NCBI GenBank assembly: GCA_001949185.1
Contig: BDGG01000006.1
Coordinates: forward strand, 1,036,827-1,100,826
DNA: 64,000 nt
Source of the DNA: Ramazzottius varieornatus
Taxonomy: Eukaryota > Animalia > Tardigrada
Direction: 5' to 3'
Shown here: positions 4,640-38,377 of the stretch, in pieces
Layout of the letters: every line of letters begins with the position of its first letter
How positions within the stretch are numbered: position 1 is the first letter of the stretch
Translations under genes and position numbers: made by a program
The notes under the pieces: generated by a model
What the model saw: the letters and a program-made list of their open reading frames with translations, nothing else
What the model was told of the DNA's origin: nothing
Databases searched by the model: none

Positions 4640-5103
4640 AGTCCTCCTCACGACAGGCCGTAAAGCTCCGTTGATTGTGTTGATCTTGAAAGTGGATTAC
4701 AAAGTTTCGCTTTCAAGATAAGCAGCGCTCGAGTAGCTTATCTCGGAAGCGAAAACGAATTATTCTCTGCACACTTCTCAAAATTTCAAATTTCCATTTC
4801 TCAGCTGATCTCTGTCTGCACAGTGCTTGACGTTGCGAGATACCGTTTCACGTATGGGCTTCTTGATACCTATTAGTATCGGGGATATCGACAGACAGAG
4901 ACTAGCCAGAGAGAAAACCATGAATTTCAGCCTAGTCAGGAGGCAAAGTTTGCCAACAGACCTACCTCGCAAAACTCGCGCATTTCGGCTGCCGTTTCCG
5001 AGACTTTGGAAGAACGCAATTTTGCCTCACGACTAATTTCCGTTGATCCAGGAAACTCATATTTTAAAACAAACATTTGCGACATAAACAGCTCGGTCGT
5101 GAG
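4640..5103. mobile_element. MITE, family A copy 1 (right terminus eroded)
   Basis: Starts agtcctcctcacgacaggccgtaaagctcc and is highly similar over ~460 bp to 12772-13247. Ends ...gtcgtgag without the last gaggact. Confidence 0.8.
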
Positions 5104-6019
5104 TAGATCTAATATCTACTCAGAAACCATAAGTGACGACCAAACAACTTACGCGCTTTAATTGAAACGGCTGGTGTTTCGCAAAAGAATTCTACAGTAC
5201 TCAAAACATGCGGAAGTTTGGATAACTCACGCAGTTATCCAAACTTGAGCACACTCAAAACACTTCTCACAGCTCTCCTCTGCGTTCACCTTTCTCTTTG
5301 TTTCCTTGGTACGTGATTGCCAAGCAGTCATCCGCGGATAGTCTCTTTTTATGCATGTGCGCGTCTCTGGGCATTACTTGTATGGTGGTGCATGAGAGTG
5401 CTGGATTTTTAACACGTGCGCGACACCTACATACATTCCGATAGGTCAGCGCACCTAGGGGCGTGTCAGTTGCTGCGCACTGGTGCTTGTACGGTGTTTG
5501 TATGTGCGTGTCGCGTCTACGCTAAAAAGCCGGGGCTCTCATCCACCGCCAGAAAAATCACGGAATGGACGCCAGAGACATGTACAATTATTTAAAGAGT
5601 TTTTTGAAAAATTCAAAATTAGCGTTGATCGTCGTGGTTTCTTTTTTCGGAGCGTCTATGCGCCGTTAATCTTCGTGTACTGACCTTCAACTTCAAAAAG
5701 ACTCCAAAGTTCTTGTACCGACCTTCAACTGTCGCAGCACCCCAAAAAAAGCCGTGAGCTAATCATTGAGGGATGGACCGGACCCCTGGTTTTGGTTCCT
5801 GGGGCCGGGTGGTGCGTTTCAACTTTTCGTCATTAGTTCAGGACAGAAAGCGCCAGCAGTTGCCGTATTTTCGTAAAGCAGATTGAGTGTTCGCGTTATT
5901 CTTACCGCTGGCATCGTAATAGCGCGTGGCCCATTAATTCATAGCAACACTTTGGGCGGGCTGCTATGACGAATCAAAGCTTGTACGGACTAAGGTCGGA
6001 TTCGCAACAGGGAGAGGAG

Positions 6020-11679: not shown

Positions 11680-11960
11680 GACAATTCCAGGCTGCCATAA
11701 AGAGAAACGAAAGAACTTGGCTTCTAACATTGGTCTTCTTCATTCTGGAACTTCAGGACCGAAGACCACATAACCCATTCCCAAGAACCTGTACATCAGC
11801 TCCACATCCTTCTCCGCTTGCCGAATGTTCTCTGTAGTGAACTCTGCACAAAACCTCTCCAAAGAAACTACAAAGAGAAACACTTGCTTGAAAACACGCT
11901 CTAACAGTACTAGTATCCAAATTCAATAAGTCTACTATTACTTCCAGAGGATGCACTGGC
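11680..11960 (-). pseudogene. Out-of-frame remnant resembling the start of the CBP/p300 HAT (KAT11) domain
   Basis: Removing one A from CGGAAAGCCA (~11960) gives FLRKPVHPLEVIVDLLNLDTSTV...VLCRVHYREHS...TNVRSQVLSFLF. Compare CBP FLRRQNHPEAGEVFVRVVASSDKTV...FFGMHVQEYG...RCLRTAVYHEIL. In-frame TGA at 11753. Weak similarity, judged by eye. Confidence 0.45.
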
Positions 11961-14606
11961 TTTCCGGAGGAACGCGATGTCTTCCTCGTTCAACAGAAAT
12001 GAAGGTACAGGCAGCATGTCCACTATGCTTTTCGGCAGCCAAGTTTCTAACACACGCTCCGGAACTGGGAGGGACTCCGTCTCAGCTGAAGTTGTCTCAG
12101 GAGAGCGAACAGGAGAAACTCGACCTAAGGTGTATTCGATCTGTTCTACTGTTTCGTCTATTCGTAACGGTGGAAGTTCCAATCTGCTAGAGTCAGATCT
12201 CTCTTGTGCCGTGTCGGCTTGCGTTAGATATGGTAGCACTGAGTCCGGTTGTTCAAGTGGAAAATTACCAGGGGCAGTGTTTGTGAGATCTGGTGGTGAG
12301 CGCGTGCTGACTATTGGAGAATTTTCTGAAGTGGTTTGATCAGATTTACTGTCTTGATTCATGTCTGACTTCTGGAGATCTGTGTTACAGCTGGCTAGTT
12401 GATCGAGGTATTCGCCAGGAGGTCGCCTGGAAAATTCGTCACATTGGACCTGAGGAGAGGAGCATAGAGCTGAGGCAGGAAAAACTCCGGTGGAACTACT
12501 CTGAGCTTTGACGTTTTGGCATTGTGCGTTTTCCGGAGTCACCGGACTCTTTTCAAAAGACTCGGAAAGAACCTTCAGTTGTTCGTGAAACTGTTGACGA
12601 AGTACGGGCAGGTGATCGGCGATGGCCTTGTCGTAACTTTCCTACGATAAAAAAACCAGTCAGAACCTTACGTCCACAGTCTGTGCGTGTGACGCACCGC
12701 GGAAACTGGACAGTTTTCGTACGATAAATACTGGACAATAAAGCGGGCCGAGCTTACCGAAATTAAGTCATTAGTCCTCCTCACGACAGGCCGTAAAGCT
12801 CCGTTGATTGTGTTGATCTTGAAAGTGGATTACAAAGTTTCGCTTTCAAGATAAGCAGCGCTCGAGTAGCTTATCTCGGAAGCGAAAACGAATTATTCTC
12901 TGCACACTTCTCAAAATTTCAAATTTCCATTTCTCAGCTGATCTCTGTCTGCACAGTGCTTCACGTTGCGAGATACCGTTTCACGTATGCGCTTCTTGAT
13001 ACCTATTAGTGTCGGAGATATCGGCAGACAGAGACTAGCCAGAGAGAAAACCATGAATTTCAGCCTAGTCAGGAGGCAAAGTTTGCCTACAAACCTACCC
13101 CGCAAAACTCGCGCATTCCCGCTCCCGTTTCCGATACTTTGGAAAAACGCAATTTCGCCTCACTCACGACTAATTTCCGTTGATCAAGCAAACTTAACTT
13201 TTAAATCCACCGTTTGCGACATAAACAGCTCGTCGTGAGGAGGACTAATGGTTCAGGTTGACTGCTGTTTTTCGGATATGACACACCCAGTCAGCCTTTT
13301 TGTCACCATGATTTTTACGCCTACATTCGTTTGTACCTTGGAGTGGCCTGTCGCTGCAAAGATGGCCTCTTCCACTGCCTCGATTTGGACCACTATGGAG
13401 TAGTAGATGGCCACAGACTTGAGGTTGGGTTCGTACAGTGGACCAAAGACCTGTCGCAGTCTACAAAAGACAACCAGGAACGGTTAGGCCACGTAAAACC
13501 CCGGGGAAGGTACGGCGAGAGTGGCTGAGTGACTTACAAATTATCTGAGAGCACTCTTCGTGCTTTGCCTGTCCGCATTGCAATGTTGAGGGGTATCTGG
13601 AACCTGTGAGGCTGTGGAGAAGGTCCAGTCTGAGCACTAGAAGGTGAGGTGCTGGTGGTGGAGGAATTCGATGATGAAGAGAGCTTTCTTCGGAGCATCT
13701 GCGTGAGCAGTGGCTGCGAGAATGCACCTGGCATTGCCGGGGATGACTGAGGAGGTAGTTGTGATCGAGAAGTGGTTGATAAGTTCAGAGGTGACTGTGC
13801 TGGAACGGCTTGTACGGAGGGAGGAACGCTGTTCACCGTGGCGAAAGCACCTGCAGCGACCAACGGTCAACACAGTCAGAGCCAATCAATCAATAACAAT
13901 GTAAATCAATCGAACTGGCAAGAGATGGACAGCTGAAACAGAAACCAGGTCTGCTTTGGTCAGCCAGTACGTGAATGGGCCCTGATTTCTATTATAAATG
14001 CCATTTCGACAAGATGACGTAACATGACCTGATTCGGACGTGATGCAGACCTGATGCGTCATGTAATGCTATGTCACACAAGCATACTAAAATTTTGATT
14101 TCAGAAAGCGGAAAATTCGGAGGATTTCTTCACGAGAGTTTCTTCTTACGAGCAACAATTTCATCTTGGTTAGGTCTTTGAAGGATATCTCTGATGGGCA
14201 GACAGACGGGGCATTCCGCAGCGACACAGCTTTTCCAGTGGCCAAAGATAGCTGTTGTCGTCGCGCAATTTGTCACTGTAAAACCAAACTCATGATATGG
14301 AGGACAATGGAGAAACAGATATCACAAAAATTTACCTGTGCAATTTCTTCCATTTCTACAGGTGTTCATATGGTAAAGCAACTGACGAATGCTCAGACAG
14401 TATGAATCAGTGCACAGCATTTCTGCTGGAGGGGCATCAGAGTGAAGGAGGCCAGAGTGATTAGCGTAGGGCAAACTACCTTCTCGGCAGCGTTCAGCGT
14501 AGACAAAGACCAGCAGGTGCCTCCGAATAGTCTCCCGACGTCTACGTGACTCTTCTACTGTTGGGTAAGAGCCGGAGCTCACCAGGGAGGGGATAACAGA
14601 CGACAT
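11910..14606 (-). CDS. Divergent CBP/p300-like protein (TAZ1 + KIX + Ser/Pro-rich region), ~521 aa; exons 14336-14606, 14150-14275, 13538-13850, 13337-13460, 11910-12641
   Basis: Spliced reading gives TAZ1-like RRETIRRHLLVFVYAERC...CTDSYCLSIRQLLYHMNTCRNGRNCT|VTNCATTTAIFGHWKSCVAAECPVCLPIR and KIX-like RRVLSDNL|LRQVFGP...IEAVEEAIFAATGHSK|ESYDKAIADHLPVLRQQF. All four introns are GT-AG with compatible phases (1,1,2,0). 1566 nt open. Confidence 0.75.
12772..13247. mobile_element. MITE, family A copy 2 (complete), inside the KIX intron of the CBP-like gene
   Basis: Perfect terminal inverted repeats tagtcctcctcacgac / gtcgtgaggaggacta. Second copy at 4640 and an isolated end at ~61060-61087. Confidence 0.85.
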
Positions 14607-16359: not shown

Positions 16360-19300
16360 CTACTGGAGCAGTTTGGCCCAAGCGGGATCCTTGTTGACCA
16401 AGCTCTCCTTCTGGTCGGAAGCTATCCTGTCGGGCTCGTTCAGCCACTTGCGGAAAGTACTGTGGTACTTCTCAACGTCGCTCTTCCCGAAGACCTCATC
16501 GAGTCTGTCCACGGGGAAGATCTCCGCCAGGATCAGTGGACCCATCATTTCCACCAAGTACTCCTTGTACTGCGGAACGTCCATCTCGATGTCTTCTGTC
16601 AGAGCGACGGCTTGTCCAAACCTAACACACAGAAACCATGAATTTTCGATATAACAACAGTCGACCGACAGAAAGACGTACCCGTTGACGAGAGTCTCCG
16701 GAGGTAGACTGCCTTCTTTGGCCAAACCCATGAGCAGCGCCACATGCTTCGGCCTGTCAGGCTTCTTGGCTTCGACATACAAATTCGCAGCTACCGTCAC
16801 GATAAACCGCTCTTTCTGGTCCGGACTTAGTCTGGCGAGTTGACTCGAGGCACCGCTAAGTTCCTCCTGTCAAACAGAAAAGATGTACCTTCGCAAAATG
16901 TCGCCATCCTCCATACTTTTTAGCTGAGAGGCCGGCAATGAACCTTCAAGTTTCATTATTTCAAGTGGCGCAGGCTTTCAGCTAACAACAACACAAAAGT
17001 GCGCCGCTTGAGAAAAGAATGTCGTCGAGTTTTTGTGCCGACTTCCCACTCGAACAAACCCGAACCAACGATACAAAACACCCCATTTGGTCCACATTTT
17101 ACCCAGAAGAAACCTCGTACCTGCATTTCGGCATCGTCAGCGTTGAGGAAGGAAGCCACCAGATGCTTGGTGAAGTCTTCCAGTTCCTCTTCCGGAACCG
17201 GTCCTTGTTCTTTCGGCTCCTCGTTCCTCTCATCCGTCGGTACATTCATGGGTGAGCCCATCCTGGGTGTAGGTGCCGGTGTAATTTGTGGTGAGCCTTG
17301 GTTGGAGGAAGATTCCGTCATCGGGCTGCCAACTCGCATGTCCGGTGTGTTCGTCAGCGAACCCCGATGCTCACCCCGTGACATGCTGTTCTCCCGACTG
17401 TTGGTTGCCGAACGATTCGGGTTGTCCATCCTGCAAAATCAAAAGCGTAAAATACGTGCAGAAATTTCTCTTCATAAAATTTCCCTAAGCTTCAACGATT
17501 CAGCCAGCGAAAAACGTATATGTAGCTGGACAGACGAGATGAGTCAAGTCGCGCACGATTTCAGTATCACTGGCTGAGAGCGTGCGGCGTGTAGAAAAAA
17601 CAACCTTGTTATTTTGTCAAGTGGCGCAAGTTCTCGTTGTTACTGGCTGAACGGGTGCGTCACTTGCGAAAACGATCTAAATCAATTCGTTGGCCAAGCT
17701 CCTGCGTGTTCTAAAAAAGGGACAGCTTCTCATACCGGTTGCCGAAAGGACCCAATGACGTTCTAGGCGGAGGATTCAGCGAGCCGCTACCACTCGTCCA
17801 CCTTTGAGGTCCCAAGGTGACTGGTCCCCCACTAGCGCCTCCTGATCCTTGACGATCCTACAGAAGTCCCACCACAGAAGTTAATGTTCGTTTCTGACTC
17901 ACTGAAAAGGCAGTACAGAATACTCACCGATTGTCCGACCATGGACAAGAATTTATTGGGCTTGCTGGCCACGCTGCTAGTCTTGACAGCCGACGCTGGC
18001 TGGCCCATCTGTCCGCCCTGTCGGCCATCTCTTCCAGCCATACCCGCACCTCCCTGCATGTTGTTCATGGCGTTCGGCACCGACCTCACGGATTTTATAC
18101 CACCAGCCAGATGTGGAGGTGGTTGACGGCTTCTGTCCGGTCCCATTGGTGGTCGTCCTTGTGGCATAGGCGGTGGCAGTTGGTGTATAGCCGTCATCGT
18201 TTCAGCTTTCGACTGTGCTTCCTCCTTCATCTTCTCTTGTCGCACTTCCTCCTTGGTCTTGAGGCCCTTGGAAGCGTTGAGTTTTCTTGGCACAAAGTTG
18301 TTATTCTTCAGGTCGATGGCGTCTTGCATCAGGAAACGGATGCGGGAAGACGTTACTTTCAGATCGATCATCTTTTGCAGCTGATCAAAAAAGAACTTCA
18401 CACTCTGCAACGAAAATGAACATCGTCCGTGTCCACATGCTTTCGTATAGATGCGTAATGAAAACCTTGTCTTTTTGGAAAGCAACAACGGCGAGTTTAA
18501 CCGTACAAAATGAAACCCAGGTTCGTTCAACCGGACGACACCAGGAGACAAGCTCGATTTCTATTCCGGCTAGCCAAACCTCACTTTTGCTTACCGTTAC
18601 GAATTCAGGTTTGACGATCTTCTGCGAACAAGTCATCAGGAGTTTACAGAGACATTCCATCTTCTCTTCATCGGCATCTTTAAAGTCGGGTCTTTTGGGA
18701 AGAAGCCTTTGGAAGCAGCTGAGAATGACACGGTCCGTCAACATGTCGAACTTGTACAACTCCGAAATGAACCTAAAAAGAAATCACAATGTTAGAACGA
18801 TGGTTTCTCTAAATTAAAACTCTGCGAAGCATCATCGAAGATCACAATCTCATTTTCACTAACGAAACAACTTTTCATCGAAGATCACGGCAAGTGGGAG
18901 GTCGGCAAGAAAATTGACAAGATTGTTTTCTCAAGTAACGCATTCCCTCAGCGCCACTAGCTGAAAGAGTGCGCCACTTCAGAAGTGCGGTCTCATCGTA
19001 TTCCCAAGTGGCGCACGCTTGCGGCGAACAACAGTTAACCCGTGCGCCACTTGGAAGAAGGATTCTGGGATTTTGCTTGCCCAGCTCTCATTCTTGAATA
19101 TCCATTTTTAAATCACAAACTTACGTAATATTTCCGACGTAGTGTCGTTTAGCCTTGACCCTCTTTTGTTCGGCAACTTCCGGGTCGACCGTCACGTCTT
19201 CCTTGTCCTTGTCAGACTCTTGTTCTTCTCTTTCCGTCTTCTCGAAGTAATGCTGCGCGCGTTGCAGCAAGACAGTTCGGAACTTCATAGCTTGAGCGGG

Positions 19301-22300
19301 GTTTCCCTTGTCGTCCACCTCCCCAGGTTCTAGCGGCACCTGTAGGTCGATCAGCTTACGGCACAATTTGGCGTAGATCTCGGCGTAGTTCTGTTCGTCC
19401 AAGGCTTTGTCGAAGATGACGTCGACAGCGCCAACCAAGAGTTCTCCCGACTTTGTGAAAGGCATGTCCAGCATCTTGTTAGACAGCTTCTCGTAGTTGT
19501 TCGGCGAGATCTTGTTCAGCAATGCTCGAACGCTCGAGAGAATCGACTGAAAACACAAGCGAATATTTCAAATAACATTAGAAAAATCATGCTTGGAAAG
19601 ATATTGTGGAATAATTCACTGTACCTCTTTCTCAGCTTCTTCAGAGTCGATCTGGACCTTGTCCTTCTTATAGCTCGGCTTCCAGGCGTTTTCACTGCTT
19701 GCAATGCTAGCGCTGAGGTCGCGATTCAGTGTGATGACGCGCTGCTGATGTTCTTCTTGTTGGAAGTTCCTGCTCGAGTTCACTCTGGGCATCTGCGGTC
19801 CACGTTGATCGTACCCACCACCGCCACCTCCTCTTCCTTGGCCTTGACCATGATACTGGTCATTCTACAAAACATAAACCCGTCAGCACCATCCAAACAT
19901 GGACCGAAATCTCGACAGACAAACTCGACAGGATCATTTCAAGTGGCGCACATTCCCACTGCTGTTGAATGAAAGAATGCATCACTTCAGAAACCGATCT
20001 TGTCAAAACTCCAAGTGGCGCACTTTCTCAAGGTCCACGCGGAAAACGAGCGCCACTTTGAACTCCACCAAGGAATTAACATTTCCAGCTCTTCAAATTT
20101 TTCTAAATTACATCTTATGCTTGAATTTCAAATTAGGTAATTTATTTTGCTCTCGATAAATCTGACTCTAGAATATTTCTTCTGCAGATACCCCCTTACC
20201 CTGTGGCCTCCCTGTCCGCCGCCCCCGCCATCCTTCTTGATGATGGCGTTGACTTTATTCTTCAAGTCATCGGAAGCCATCATATTGCCCTGCTTATATT
20301 TGTTCTCCAGGCTGAGCAGTGCCGAGCGGTCGTACGTCTGCCTGCCAGCCACCTTCTCGAGCTTCTCCATCTCGTGTTCCACCTCCACTTCCCCGTTGAC
20401 GTTCTCCACGGGCCGGTTCTCCGCCTGTCTGTTCTCCTGAACAGCTGGTGGCGGCGTGGCCACATGTGGAGGTCTAGCCAAGCGGGCATCCTGAACTTGT
20501 ACGGACTTCCGGCGGATCTCGGGCATGGCACCCAAGCCCATTCCACGGTCCACGTGAGGCTTGACGGGCTCTTCTGACTTGAGTTCAGGAGTGGCTGTGG
20601 CCGAAGGTCTTCGTGGCTCCAAGGATACCTTTGCGAAAACAAGAAAAAGCGCTAGAAGTATTTGCGACCTTCGTAAACAAACTCGTCAGGATCCCTTCTC
20701 AAGCGGCTCATGTTTACAGCCAGTAGCATTGAAAGCCTGCGCCACTTGGAAAAGTCGTCAACATCCGATTCTAAGTGGCGCACGCTTTCAACCACTAACA
20801 CTTGGAACGTGCGCAACTTTATAGGAAAACTATATCCACTGAATTTCTAGTTGTCTGACGGCCGAGCTTCACAGCACGGAAACGTAAACTACAGAAACCA
20901 AGGAGATACTCCGTACCTTGTCCATTACGGGTTGCGAGGCCTCTGACGGCATAGCGGGAGGCTTGGAAGACGTGTTGGAAGAGGAAGTGACTGTCGGCTG
21001 CGGAGGAGTGTCGCTAGCCTCAGTCTTGACGGAAGGCACATCGGAAACTGGCGGCTTGCTTTCAGGCGTTGTCCTAGCACGATCAGCTTTCGCTGCATCC
21101 TCTGCAACCACACAAAACGCAAAATCAGTCCTTCTGGAATATTTCAAACGAGAATCTCATCCTGCATACACGACGTCGCAGGCTTAGCATAACAGACGGG
21201 TATGCAGGTGGATGCAAAGTTTTCAAAGTTAGTCTCCGGTCTCACAGATGAGAAATAAACCATCATAAATCGAACTAAAATCGAACATAGAATGTATTCT
21301 TACCGTGTGGACGAGTTTCACCGGGCTGCTGTCGCATCTGGTCAGAAGAAGACTGTTGCTGCTGTTGTGAAGAAGTAACACCGGTATCATTCTTCACCAC
21401 AGTCGGACTATCTCCAATCTGACCTACAACACACATCAAAACCTTCCATTCTGCACCACGGAAGCACGCTGACATCATTAAGACAGCTGATGTCAAGATC
21501 GGCCCACCTTTAGACTCTGTATCCTTGGACTTGGGCGCGCCGCCGGAAGACTCGCTGGTTGTGCGGCTAGTGCTACCTCCCTCGTTCATCCGAGCATGGA
21601 TCTGTCGCGCAAAATCGCCCTGGATTGAGCGTTTGAGGTCGTCCTCCGTTGTAGGCTCCTTCTTGTCTTCTGCTGCTACAGATTCGCTCACAGAAGATTG
21701 ACGACTGGTTGGCTCGGAAGTCTGCAACTATAGACCCTATGTCAACCAGTTACCCCTTCTCATCTCATGCACCACCCTACTCTTATCCATTGAATACGTT
21801 CAGTGATGCTGTATGCAGGCGAACGAACTAATTTCCACGTGCATGACCCACGTGCATGACCCACGTGCATGACCCACGTGCATGACCCACGTGCATGACC
21901 CACGTGCATACAGCTCATAGTTTCACCACTCATCCGTGAGTATGCAGGTACGTGACGCACTATCACGCTTATCACCCGCCTGCACACTACTGGACTGTAA
22001 GTCAACCCCAGAACCAGTGTGCTGGTGCATGAAGTTCTTGACTGGCACATACCTGGCTGGCATCAGCTGGTACAGCAGCGGCTTTGGGTTTCTCATCGGT
22101 TTTCGGGATATCCACCACAGATCCACTCTTGGGATCAGTAAAGACCAGGACATTTTTTTTCCGTTCGGGCAATGGCTTCGTCGCGATCGGAACTGAAGGC
22201 GTACGACCTGGTGCCTGACCCGGCACGAAGAGCGGATCAGTCTGCCAGTAAGGGCGTACTGGAGGTCCGACACCAGGGGGTCTAGGCGCGAAGCTGGGTG

Positions 22301-35475: not shown

Positions 35476-38377
35476 ATGGAAGGAATTAGCAGTAACGGTA
35501 AGTGTATCGAATTTTACTTTGATTTGTTTGGTGAACATGGTGCAATGCAAGGGTGTCAGCATGGGTTTCAAACTAAAGTGATCAGGGCTCGAACTGGACA
35601 CGGCTTGTGGATATGCAACGTGGTGGTGCGATTAGTTTCCCTGTTTGCTGATCTGGATACACCTGCGTACAGGGAGAGTAGGCGTTGCGTCGGATTAGGA
35701 AAACTTGTCTGAGTTTTTGTCGATAGGGATCGATTTATTGACTTTCATTTCAGTCAGCTGTCTTCTTTGTGGCTGTGTTTTATGTTTACTCTTTTTCCTG
35801 TAGAGAGTTCCGGCAGCGAGATGCGAGTCAACGCGGAGAACGAAGTGCCGGATCAGATTGAAAAGCACGAAGACGAACTTATGAACGGTGCTCCCACCAG
35901 TAGCAACAAGAAGTCCTTCGGGGATCGAGTCAGCAAACTGTTGGGCCCCGTGGTATATTCCGAAGGCCCGGAGATAACGGTACATTTTTTTTGCATGAGA
36001 GAAGTAGTCATACCATGAAGGTGATGGTTATCACCTGGTTGTCTGACTGCGTTACAGGAAAGCTTCGTTCATGTGGCTCGCAGCATGTCAACATTCACCG
36101 CGGCTGAGCGCGCCGATTTTATCTTCCATCTCGTGATTATGTACTGCGAAGCACGTCGCGAAGACCAGCCCAAGATTCAAGGACTACTGAGTGAACTGGC
36201 CAAGAAAAATGTCTTGGCCAAAACGCACATTCTGCAAAGGTAAAACTTGCATTGAATCCACTCAGAAAACCTACTCAGCCTGTTTTCCCAAAGTGGCGCC
36301 GATCTCAGTCAATAACAGTGACAACATGCGCCACTTCGAAACCCGGCAAGATCGTCTTTTCAAGTGGCGCACAATTTCCGGCAGTAAAAATGGACACGTG
36401 CGCCATTTGAGATATCGATCTAGTGAATTCATTTTCCAACGTCCCGTATTTCGATTCTGCACAGTTTCATTCAGTTTCATCTTCGCAGCGCGAAACGTCT
36501 GGCGGCGGAAGTCGATGGGTTGTTGATCGACTGGCCCAACGTTTATTCGTGTACCATCGAGCTCCTTGGAGCTTTGTTGGTCCGAAGCGACGAGAAAGAC
36601 ACCGTAGAGAACCTGACAGCGTTCCGAAGAGCCTTCAAGGAGAACCGTGGTTTTCTCCAATGTCTCTACTCGACCTACCCCAACTTGGGCCTCGAGACTT
36701 CCCAGTCCACCCCAAAGAAACGCGGCTCGATGGGAGCGAGAACGTCCTTCAGCGAGCGACGAGCCTCGATGGGCAACCAGACCCTTCCCTTCTTCCGGTC
36801 GCCCGTCGAAGTGAAGGATAGGTTTGTCCAGCCTGTCGGACTGCGTCCTGCATCGACTGGCAAGCCTCCTGCCCATGTCTACACGAGGGAGGAGATGCTA
36901 AAGTTGGGGGAAGCCGTAAAAAAGATACCTGTTCGAGCTGAGGTGTTAGAAGCCGTCAGAGCTTTCAAGAACGATAGCTGGGTGGGCGATCGTGATAACC
37001 AACAGCTCAAGCGTTCACGCTTTGTCTCGGAGTCGACGGCTCATAACGAGGGATTCAACCCGACGAAGAGGATGTTAGAAAGTACGAGCCCGACATTCGG
37101 AGCAGAGAATGGCGGCAGCTCGCGAACCTTACAACCTCATCCCGAAAAGGTAAGGCTCTCAGTTCACTGCACAGTCAACAACGTCCGGCTTGCACCTGCA
37201 TACAAGCCACCCCTAGTTTCACGGCAGGTGCTCGCATGCAGGTGCACCAACCTCTCCTTGTTTCACGGGTCGCATACACCTGCATGGTTCTCCGCTGTAC
37301 TTCTGTGCTGGTAACGTGTATGCAGGTGCCTGTAAGTCGACCAGGCTTTGTTGTTGACGTTGCATTTTCCTTCGGACGTTTCTGGAAACCGTTTCATGGA
37401 TCGGTAAGAAATCTCGCTTAATTTTTTTGCAGGGTCACAACAACCGAAATCAGTTTTTCGGAGGAACGCGTCAGCGTTACGTCTCGGAGAGTCATCACCA
37501 ACAACCACCCAGCCACGCTCCTTCGACCAGCAAGTCTCCCACTCCAGCTGCTGGTGCCGCGCCACGTAACGTTCCTGAAGTCTCTCCTCGAGGGAAGCCA
37601 GTTAGTCCACCGTCGCACAGAGGGGCTCCGGGCAGCAAGCCTCGTTATAACAGCGTCAGCACGTCTTCGCCAGTCAAGATGGAGCCAGCCGGCCAAGCCA
37701 AGAATCAGCCCAACGACCCACCCCAGGCAACACCTGCACCGCATGTCACGCCACATGGACCAGCTAGTCGTCCCCAACACTCCAACGGTCGTCCTGCGAA
37801 TGCTAAACCGAACAAGTTCTTGACTGCTCTTCACGTAAGTGATCTACGCGCTCGGCGGGTAATCTCGGCAGGATCGTTTTTCCAGGTGCCGCATGCCTCC
37901 AGCCAATAATACCGAACTCGTGCGCCACTTGAAGAAACTGATCGTTTCTCCAAGTGCCGCACGCTTTCAGTGAATTGAAGCGTGCGCCACTTGGGAAAAC
38001 GTTCTTGTCGTGTTTGTTTGCCGAGCTCCCGTCTCTCTGAGATAGAGTGGTGACTTTAGTGGACGGTGTGTGAAGGTAAGAATAATCTTTTGCAGGTGGA
38101 AAGAGCAATGGAAACGGAGAGCGGACAGCCAAGTCCGACGTTGAGTCCAGGTGTGAAGGGTTCTTGGACCCAAGGAAGTGGCATGCCACACAAGGGTGGC
38201 GAAGGTCTGCCGCACTTCCCGCCACCGCCATCTGCTCGTCCCTTCGGGAATCAAGGAGCCAACCGTCATACGGGACCGGTCCATCATGGTCAGTTCCGTA
38301 CTGGCTATTCAGGGGCGCCGCGGCAGGCACAGCCTGGATCGTCGGAGGAGAACTGGCGCCGCCCTGTTCAGCCATGA
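35476..38377 (+). CDS. Rearranged eIF4G paralogue, ~574 aa: MA3, eIF4E-binding motif, post-MIF4G linker, no MIF4G; exons 35476-35497, 35804-35979, 36058-36239, 36489-37149, 37433-37834, 38096-38377
   Basis: Six exons join in phase (1725 nt, GT-AG, no stops). MA3-like ERADFIFHLVIMYCEARREDQPKIQGLLSELAKK...VDGLLIDWPNVY, then YTREEML, KPNKFL and SWTQGSG...PPPPSARPFGN. Each segment aligns to the local eIF4G. Confidence 0.8.

What the first reader, a model, noticed from the sequence alone, without database searches (positions are those of the whole stretch)
11910..14606. Hidden CBP/p300 derivative keeping only TAZ1 and KIX
Seen: five exons, not evident from the ORF track, splice into ~521 aa with TAZ1-like (HMNTC...C...C...HWKSC...CPVCLP) and KIX-like segments. 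The last exon runs without a break from KIX helix 3 through a Ser/Pro-rich stretch to HAT-like sequence, leaving no room for bromodomain, RING or PHD. The first zinc-ligand His of TAZ1 (LHAHKC) reads VYAERC. Known: TAZ1 binds HIF-alpha/CITED-type activation domains and KIX binds CREB/Myb. Inference: this is either a catalytically dead decoy or adaptor that titrates activators, or a young pseudogene of a fast-evolving CBP copy.
Basis: partly seen in the sequence, partly recalled or inferred. Interest (0 to 1): 0.82.

Follow-up and report, generated by a model that had tools for sequence, protein, structure and literature searches.

The report
Tardigrade HAT-less CBP mini-paralogue (RvY_11377)
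This is a real, already annotated gene of the tardigrade Ramazzottius varieornatus: an old, fast-evolving partial copy of the coactivator CBP that keeps a recognisable TAZ1 zinc domain and a badly eroded KIX remnant, with no enzyme part, much like the short cbp-2 gene known in C. elegans.

Summary
The observation largely holds. That model adds a sixth exon. TAZ1 is solid: Pfam zf-TAZ scores 44.5 bits, solved TAZ1 domains match at E 2.6e-12, and 11 of 12 zinc ligands are kept. The His-to-Tyr change at the first ligand is real.

KIX is not recognised by any profile. It is still homologous by descent. The introns in the TAZ1-KIX block sit at the same codons and phases as in the canonical CBP on contig C15. 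The intron-anchored alignment beats shuffles (22 of 20,000), and language-model neighbours are KIX families. The phospho-KID contact residues are replaced.

The 'HAT-like' tail is not supported. No bromodomain, RING/PHD, HAT or TAZ2 is present.

The frame has 0 internal stops against 21 and 24 in the other two frames, and all splice sites are canonical, so a neutral pseudogene is unlikely.

No relative was found beyond the canonical CBP. Two Hypsibius proteomes carry only two TAZ domains.

The closest precedent is C. elegans cbp-2 (TAZ1 + KIX only), which is expressed and has RNAi effects. Verdict: a new member of a known kind, of moderate interest. Expression and function remain untested.

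The parts
14336..14606 (-). Exon 1 (271 nt). It holds the start codon at 14606-14604, 19 N-terminal residues, and TAZ1 helices 1-2 with zinc sites 1 and 2. It ends in phase 1.
   Evidence: Exact mapping of P0001 with donor GTAAAT. zf-TAZ scores 23.8 bits on this exon alone. BLASTP to the canonical CBP exon gives E 2e-8.
14150..14275 (-). Exon 2 (126 nt). It holds the last ligand of TAZ1 zinc site 2 (Cys94) and zinc site 3 (motifs HWKSC and CPVCLP).
   Evidence: zf-TAZ scores 20.4 bits. It is 44% identical over 32 aa to canonical CBP, E 4e-10. The intron before it lies at the same codon and phase as in canonical CBP.
14202..14525 (-). TAZ1 domain, residues 28-115, interrupted by the 60-nt intron 1. 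Ligands are Tyr36(His)/Cys40/Cys65/Cys70, His79/Cys83/Cys89/Cys94 and His103/Cys107/Cys112/Cys115. The loop between Cys40 and Cys65 is 24 residues, against 12 in mammalian CBP.
   Evidence: Pfam PF02135 scores 44.5 bits on P0001. PDB TAZ1 chains match at E 2.6e-12 to 1e-10, TAZ2 only at E 0.5.
13538..13850 (-). Exon 3 (313 nt). It encodes a Ser/Pro/Thr/Gln-rich linker and the stretch that occupies the place of KIX helix 1. It ends in phase 2 with a split Leu codon (TT|A).
   Evidence: Canonical CBP has the same split TT|A Leu codon at the same place. The helix-1 stretch itself shows no similarity: 11035 of 20000 shuffles reach its score.
13337..13460 (-). Exon 4 (124 nt, 41 codons). It is the counterpart of the canonical KIX core exon (118 nt, 39 codons).
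   Evidence: The global alignment to the canonical exon is reached by 89 of 20000 shuffles. There is no BLAST or Pfam match.
12549..13569 (-). KIX-derived region, residues about 227-309, spread over exons 3-5 and interrupted by introns 3 and 4. Three helices are predicted.
   Evidence: Intron positions are shared with canonical CBP. The shuffle test on the summed score is reached by 22 of 20000 shuffles, z 3.4. The three best atlas feature hits are KIX families (0.83-0.80), and the best structural rows are KIX at TM 0.59. Helices 227-245, 250-274 and 278-309 appear in a low-confidence AlphaFold2 model.
11942..12641 (-). Exon 5 (700 nt). It encodes the counterpart of KIX helix 3, an acidic Ser/Thr/Pro-rich stretch that the AlphaFold2 model leaves mostly unstructured (about 170 aa), and the start of a C-terminal helical part. 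The donor is GTAATA at 11941.
   Evidence: An exhaustive HMMER search with this exon finds only the protein itself.
11740..11867 (-). Exon 6 (128 nt including the stop at 11740-11742).
   Evidence: P0001 residues 512-553 map here after a 74-nt GT-AG intron.
11910..11912 (-). It is reached only if intron 5 (11868-11941) is retained, which gives 521 aa.
   Evidence: ORF 11910-12542 and the translation. Which 3' end is used could not be tested.
11743..12035 (-). C-terminal helical part, residues about 481-553, with no recognisable family.
   Evidence: Helices. No Pfam, PDB or atlas match. No paralogue in the genome. No similarity to the canonical CBP locus.
12769..13250 (.). MITE-like repeat with 26-nt terminal inverted repeats, inserted in intron 4. 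It explains why that intron is 695 nt long.
   Evidence: One search shows the inverted repeats. One search finds at least 40 near-full copies at 91-94% identity in the genome.

Best explanation
RvY_11377 is a protein-coding gene that arose by a DNA-level partial duplication of the 5' part of the tardigrade's own CBP/p300 gene (the TAZ1-to-KIX exons). It then evolved very fast. It kept a TAZ1 zinc-bundle scaffold, let the KIX module erode to a three-helix remnant, and gained a long acidic, probably disordered stretch plus a short helical C-terminus of unknown origin. It has no HAT, bromodomain, RING/PHD, ZZ, TAZ2 or NCBD, so it cannot acetylate or read chromatin.

The most likely mode of action is inferred, not shown. 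Through TAZ1 it would bind amphipathic acidic activation domains of transcription factors. It would then either compete with full-length CBP for them (a decoy) or link them to partners of its own C-terminal part (an adaptor). The KIX remnant probably no longer binds phospho-CREB in the canonical way.
For: Identity and structure: the six GT-AG exons reproduce GAV00546.1 exactly.

TAZ1: Pfam scores 44.5 bits. Solved TAZ1 domains match at E 2.6e-12, TAZ2 only at 0.5. Eleven of 12 ligands are kept although identity to the canonical domain is only 25-44%.

Origin by DNA-level duplication of CBP:
- The intron inside TAZ1 (phase 1, three residues before the Cys), the first KIX intron (phase 2, the same split TT|A Leu codon) and the second KIX intron (phase 0) coincide exactly with those of the canonical gene on C15.
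- The intron after TAZ1 has the same phase and lies within three codons of the canonical one.
- The genome holds TAZ only in canonical CBP and in this gene.

KIX ancestry: intron-anchored similarity of the helix 2 and helix 3 segments is reached by 89 and 95 of 20000 shuffles, and the summed score by 22 of 20000. KIX, KIX_2 and Med15 families are the nearest atlas neighbours.

Selection on the frame: 0 internal stops in 553 codons against 21 and 24 in the other two frames. There is no nucleotide similarity left to the parent gene.

Loss of enzyme parts: no other Pfam family at E <= 10. HAT_KAT11 occurs only at C15 and in a small fragment 450 kb away.

Precedent: C. elegans cbp-2 (TAZ1 + KIX only) and cbp-3 (TAZ1 only) are expressed, and their RNAi changes reporter activity (PMC10320766).
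Against:
- No orthologue was found, so no dN/dS could be computed.
- The first zinc site has Tyr for His and a doubled loop, which may destabilise the fold.
- KIX fails every profile test.
- Single-sequence AlphaFold2 is of low confidence (mean pLDDT 42), and its fold search gives nothing significant.
- A gene that died recently after a long functional life cannot be excluded.
Confidence: 0.6

Rival explanations
1. It is a recently inactivated or functionless relic. On this view the copy was constrained for a long time, but it is now transcribed noise or an unexpressed ab initio model. The eroded KIX and the His-to-Tyr change would be signs of decay.
For: KIX is not recognisable by any profile. 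The first zinc ligand is lost. No orthologue or other relative was found. Two Hypsibius proteomes hold only two TAZ domains (PMC12941274 Table S2). The public gene set merges ab initio with RNA-seq models, so the model alone does not prove expression.
Against: There are 0 internal stops against 21 and 24 in the other frames. All ten splice sites are canonical. Eleven of 12 ligands are kept amid about 70% divergence. [quoted passage not shown]
Confidence: 0.2
2. It is a neofunctionalised zinc-scaffold protein. TAZ1 would have been re-targeted to a tardigrade-specific partner unrelated to competition with CBP. The acidic stretch or the C-terminal amphipathic helices might bind TAZ1 in cis (autoinhibition), or might recruit full-length CBP.
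For: There is an extreme rate asymmetry. The canonical TAZ1 and KIX exons score 94 and 51 bits against mammalian structures, whereas the whole TAZ1 of the copy reaches 49.5 bits and its KIX nothing. The middle region is acidic (26 D/E against 12 K/R). The new C-terminal helical part has no relative anywhere. The classical TAZ1 ligand HIF1A is reported lost in this species.
Against: This is purely inferential. No partner is known, and fast evolution equally fits relaxed constraint.
Confidence: 0.15
3. The 'KIX' part is not KIX at all. On this view only TAZ1 was duplicated, and residues 215-309 are an unrelated helical linker.
For: There is no Pfam, PDB or BLAST match. The helix-1 segment shows no similarity. 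Atlas scores are below 0.9 and count as leads only.
Against: Two introns inside this stretch coincide in codon position and phase with the two KIX introns of canonical CBP, including an identical split Leu codon, and the exon sizes are close (124 against 118 nt). The anchored similarity is reached by 22 of 20000 shuffles. All top atlas families belong to the KIX clan.
Confidence: 0.05

Closest known systems
C. elegans CBP-2 and CBP-3, short paralogues of cbp-1 (PMC10320766)
   Same: They are partial duplicates of the resident CBP/p300 gene. CBP-2 keeps only the first zinc finger (TAZ1) and KIX, CBP-3 only TAZ1, and neither has a HAT domain. They were long regarded as pseudogenes, yet they are expressed and RNAi alters reporter activity.
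   Different: The worm copies lie within 160 kb of cbp-1 and still align closely with it. The tardigrade copy is on another contig (C6 against C15), has no nucleotide similarity left and is only 25-44% identical in TAZ1. Its KIX is below profile detection, and it carries a new C-terminal part. The origins are therefore almost certainly independent.
Canonical CBP/p300 (KAT3) of R. varieornatus, G000:C15 about 1062115-1067596
   Same: It is the parent gene. Both have a TAZ1 of the TAZ1 subtype, and the intron positions and phases through TAZ1 and KIX match.
   Different: The canonical gene has KIX (52 bits), HAT_KAT11 (130 + 100 bits) and TAZ2 (47 bits), and it is highly conserved with mammals. 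The copy lacks everything downstream of KIX.
Other stand-alone TAZ or KIX proteins: plant BTB-TAZ (BT) proteins, MED15/Gal11 and plant KIX8/9 (from my own knowledge)
   Same: These use a TAZ or a KIX module as a pure protein-interaction adaptor, without acetyltransferase activity.
   Different: They are unrelated in origin and architecture. None combines a CBP-type TAZ1 with a KIX remnant.

Membership tests
zf-TAZ (PF02135), TAZ1 subtype | Profile match above Pfam's gathering score | tested here: met
   44.5 bits against a cut-off of 25, covering profile positions 2-72 of 72. The six-frame own-genome scan gives 30.1 bits.
zf-TAZ (PF02135), TAZ1 subtype | Three HCCC zinc sites | tested here: inconclusive
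   Sites 2 and 3 are intact. Site 1 has Tyr36 in place of His, and its loop is 24 residues instead of 12. Whether zinc is still bound there cannot be told from sequence.
zf-TAZ (PF02135), TAZ1 subtype | Closer to TAZ1 than to TAZ2 | tested here: met
   TAZ1 chains match at E 2.6e-12 to 1e-10, TAZ2 chains at E 0.5-1.6. In the own genome the only other match is the TAZ1 exon of CBP.
KIX (PF02172) | Profile or sequence match to KIX | tested here: not met
   No hit at E <= 10 for the exons or the whole protein. No hit in the six-frame scan. No PDB KIX hit. No BLAST hit to the canonical KIX exon.
KIX (PF02172) | Homology by descent: position in the gene and shared introns | tested here: met
   Both KIX introns share codon position and phase with canonical CBP. 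The anchored alignment score is reached by 22 of 20000 shuffles.
KIX (PF02172) | Three-helix bundle fold | tested here: inconclusive
   Three helices of fitting length are predicted, but pLDDT is about 50-59. The atlas model aligns to KIX clusters at TM 0.59. Foldseek on my own model finds nothing significant; the Gal11 KIX appears at E 6.
KIX (PF02172) | Phospho-KID contact residues Tyr658, Lys662 and Tyr650 (their role is from my own knowledge) | tested here: not met
   In the intron-anchored alignment these positions are Pro290, Gln294 and Asp282.
CBP/p300 (KAT3) acetyltransferases | HAT_KAT11 catalytic domain | tested here: not met
   No PF08214 match in the protein or in the window. The tail has no similarity to the canonical CBP locus.
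CBP/p300 (KAT3) acetyltransferases | Bromodomain, RING/PHD, ZZ, TAZ2, NCBD | tested here: not met
   zf-TAZ (one copy) is the only Pfam family found at E <= 10.
HAT-less partial CBP duplicates (cbp-2 type) | Derived from the resident CBP gene, keeps the N-terminal TAZ1(+KIX) block, lacks HAT | tested here: met
   The architecture of CBP-2 is described in PMC10320766.
HAT-less partial CBP duplicates (cbp-2 type) | Expressed and functional | not testable with these tools
The supplementary tables that are held do not list the gene.

The most novel reading that the evidence does not exclude
HAT-less 'mini-CBP' proteins (TAZ1 plus a KIX-derived module) may have arisen independently in nematodes (cbp-2 and cbp-3) and in a tardigrade. 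They would be a recurrent way to tune or block coactivator recruitment. In the extremotolerant R. varieornatus, which has lost the HIF pathway, the fast-evolving copy might be a lineage-specific competitor or adaptor for stress-responsive activators, for example during entry into or exit from anhydrobiosis.
Probability: 0.2. Interest if true: 0.6.

Novelty: new member of a known kind. Interest (0 to 1): 0.38.

Why it matters
CBP/p300 is a central hub of animal transcription. Short paralogues that keep only its activator-docking modules could act as natural dominant-negative or adaptor forms.

A second, independent case beside C. elegans cbp-2 and cbp-3 would suggest that partial duplication of the N-terminal block is a repeatable evolutionary route. 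It also offers a natural experiment on how far TAZ1 and KIX can drift while the gene stays open.

There is a practical point as well. UniProt's automatic name 'histone acetyltransferase' for this protein is misleading, because it has no HAT domain. Germline knockout by DIPA-CRISPR has been reported in an extremotolerant parthenogenetic tardigrade (PMC11175437, seen only as a title and abstract; the species was not checked), so the function may be testable.

Tried and rejected
1. 'HAT-like' tail. Pfam at E <= 10, tblastn against the whole canonical CBP locus and the atlas search of residues 470-553 gave nothing. A resemblance to the end of the p300 HAT domain that I recalled from memory was not borne out, and I dropped it.

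2. Orthologues.
- The word search with exon 5, with the whole protein and with the TAZ1 region found only the protein itself. Those searches are limited by word sharing and length.
- The exhaustive HMMER search with exon 5 over 1.84 billion representatives found only itself.
- The metagenome scan found no relative.

3. Structure. Single-sequence AlphaFold2 gave mean pLDDT 42, and Foldseek against the PDB found nothing significant. An alignment of P0001 with the canonical exon translations was misaligned by MAFFT, so I did not use it for a second prediction.

The gene id is absent from the held supplements of four papers, and no supplements are held for PMC5034306.

5. Link to the HAT fragment at C6:601843-602040. 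That fragment is 82% identical in nucleotides to canonical CBP. It is therefore far younger than this gene and is a separate event.

6. Segmental duplication including neighbours. tblastx of the whole window against the canonical locus finds only the TAZ exon.

Joined-model step: I sent no self-joined exon model to any search tool, and exon searches were made by reference. Full-length searches used the database record P0001. The script threaded P0001 back onto the window to find the exon borders. To check identity it concatenated the exons in memory only; it neither printed nor saved a joined sequence.
Full report
**What is there.** The window is G000:C6:1036827-1100826 of a 55.8-Mb, 200-contig assembly. 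The gene product found below is GenBank GAV00546.1, locus RvY_11377, 'hypothetical protein' of the tardigrade Ramazzottius varieornatus. UniProt (A0A1D1VIC4) auto-names it 'histone acetyltransferase'. The contig is not human.

An exhaustive HMMER search with the long last exon returned one protein, P0001 (553 aa), as the only hit among 1.84 billion representatives. Threading P0001 back onto the window gives six exons: 14606-14336, 14275-14150, 13850-13538, 13460-13337, 12641-11942 and 11867-11740. All introns are GT-AG, with lengths 60, 299, 77, 695 and 74 nt, and the translation is identical to P0001.

The public model instead splices to a sixth exon. I could not test which end is used.

**TAZ1.** Each half of the domain scores just below Pfam's cut-off on its own exon (23.8 and 20.4 bits). 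The whole protein scores 44.5 bits against a cut-off of 25. The best solved relatives are the TAZ1 domains of p300 and CBP (E 2.6e-12 to 1e-10), while TAZ2 domains reach only E 0.5.

The ligands are Tyr36/Cys40/Cys65/Cys70, His79/Cys83/Cys89/Cys94 and His103/Cys107/Cys112/Cys115. The first loop is 24 residues, against 12 in mammalian CBP. The loop contains two histidines; whether one of them replaces the lost ligand is speculation.

**KIX.** No profile or pairwise method sees KIX:
- Pfam on the exons and on the whole protein at E <= 10
- the six-frame scan of the genome with PF02172, which finds only the canonical gene
- PDB sequences
- BLASTP against the canonical KIX exon

The stretch is nevertheless KIX by descent. 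In the canonical CBP gene on contig C15 (TAZ1 at 1062115, KIX at 1063164-1063478, HAT at 1065642-1066675, TAZ2 at 1067381), the introns compare with those of RvY_11377 as follows:

| Intron | Phase | Canonical context | RvY_11377 context | Agreement |
|---|---|---|---|---|
| Inside TAZ1 | 1 | split codon three residues before the Cys (M-P-H-C) | same place (V-T-N-C) | exact |
| After TAZ1 | 1 | 12 codons after CLP | 15 codons after CLP | same phase, within three codons |
| First KIX intron | 2 | split Leu codon TT\|A, five residues before the conserved Phe | identical | exact |
| Second KIX intron | 0 | ...ANTR\|EEYY | ...GHSK\|ESYD | exact |

The exon between the two KIX introns is 118 nt in the canonical gene and 124 nt in the copy.

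Using the introns as anchors, I scored three segments against the canonical ones and against 20,000 shuffles:

| Segment | Shuffles reaching the observed score |
|---|---|
| Helix 1 | 11,035 of 20,000 (no similarity) |
| Helix 2 exon | 89 of 20,000 |
| Start of helix 3 | 95 of 20,000 |
| Sum of the three | 22 of 20,000 (z 3.4) |

Twenty-four control windows from the rest of the protein all scored lower. For residues 215-310 the protein atlas lists KIX, KIX_2 and Med15 clusters as the three nearest by features (0.83-0.80, which the tool rates as leads only). It also lists KIX clusters first by structure (TM 0.59). AlphaFold2 without an alignment predicts three helices (227-245, 250-274, 278-309), but at pLDDT of only 50-59. 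Its fold search is not significant.

In the anchored alignment, the positions of Tyr650, Tyr658 and Lys662 are Asp282, Pro290 and Gln294. From my own knowledge, Tyr658 and Lys662 hold the phosphoserine of CREB. So this is an eroded KIX remnant, not a canonical KIX.

**What is absent.** zf-TAZ is the only Pfam family found at E <= 10. The tail (residues 470-553) has no atlas neighbour, no similarity to the canonical CBP locus and no paralogue in the genome. The rest of the protein is made of:
- a Ser/Thr/Pro/Gln-rich linker (56% S+T+P+Q)
- an acidic stretch of about 170 residues that AlphaFold2 leaves mostly unstructured
- a predicted helical C-terminus of about 70 residues

**Gene or pseudogene.** The copy has no nucleotide similarity left to its parent. 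Its TAZ1 is 25% and 44% identical to the canonical domain over the two exons. The canonical exons, by contrast, score 94 bits (TAZ1) and 51 bits (KIX) against mammalian structures.

Despite this divergence, the coding frame has no internal stop in 553 codons, while the other two sense frames have 21 and 24. All ten splice dinucleotides are canonical, and 11 of 12 zinc ligands survive. That pattern needs long-lasting purifying selection on the frame and on the TAZ1 scaffold. A 'young pseudogene' is not compatible with it, although a recent death cannot be excluded.

The published gene set merges RNA-seq and ab initio models, and its expression table is not held.

**Distribution.** The genome has TAZ only in canonical CBP (two domains) and in this gene. 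A published count of zinc-finger domains lists zf-TAZ as 3 in R. varieornatus, 2 in Hypsibius exemplaris, 2 in H. henanensis and 6 in Paramacrobiotus metropolitanus (PMC12941274, Table S2). That fits an extra copy absent, or unrecognised, in Hypsibius. No orthologue appeared in any protein or metagenome search. The word searches are limited, and the tail probably evolves too fast to be found.

**Mechanism.**
- Shown: a CBP-derived protein with a TAZ1 scaffold and no catalytic or chromatin-reading domain.
- Inferred: it binds activation domains through TAZ1 and acts without acetylation, either as a competitor of full-length CBP or as an adaptor through its new C-terminus.

HIF1A, PHD and VHL are reported lost in this species (PMC5034306), and the CREB-contact residues of KIX are replaced.

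**Comparison with what is known.** C. elegans has two short paralogues of cbp-1: CBP-2 with only the first zinc finger and KIX, and CBP-3 with only the first zinc finger. Both lack HAT and were formerly called pseudogenes. Both are expressed, and RNAi against them affects promoter reporters (PMC10320766).

The tardigrade gene has the same architecture. It is much more diverged, unlinked to its parent gene and carries a new C-terminus, so it is almost certainly of independent origin. I found no paper that mentions RvY_11377 or a short tardigrade CBP.

**Verdict.** However, it is already annotated, its KIX is only a relic, and its tail is not HAT-like. It is a new member of a known kind (HAT-less partial CBP duplicates) and of moderate interest.

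Noticed in passing
window 12769-13250 (intron 4 of the gene); another copy at about window 4640-5113: A MITE-like element of about 482 bp with 26-nt terminal inverted repeats. At least 40 near-full copies at 91-94% identity are spread over the genome (150 first-look candidates), so this is a young and abundant family.
   Followed up: partly
G000:C6:601843-602040 (L010:5847-6032), about 450 kb from the window gene: A fragment of about 190 bp (62 codons; 158 bp align at the nucleotide level) of the CBP HAT exon. It is 82% identical in nucleotides and 73% in amino acids to the canonical CBP on C15 and has in-frame stops. It is a recent pseudogene fragment, unrelated in age to RvY_11377.
   Followed up: partly
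window 19121-19558 (-): An ORF with a MIF4G domain (PF02854, 42 bits), part of a multi-exon gene a few kb upstream. It lies in the same window as the 'MIF4G-less eIF4G paralogue' noted at 35476-38377 by another finding.
   Followed up: no
UniProt A0A1D1VIC4 (= P0001): The automatic name 'histone acetyltransferase' is a misnomer, because the protein has no HAT domain.
   Followed up: yes
PMC12941274 Table S2: Paramacrobiotus metropolitanus is listed with six zf-TAZ domains, against two in each Hypsibius species. Extra CBP copies or further short TAZ paralogues may exist there.
   Followed up: no
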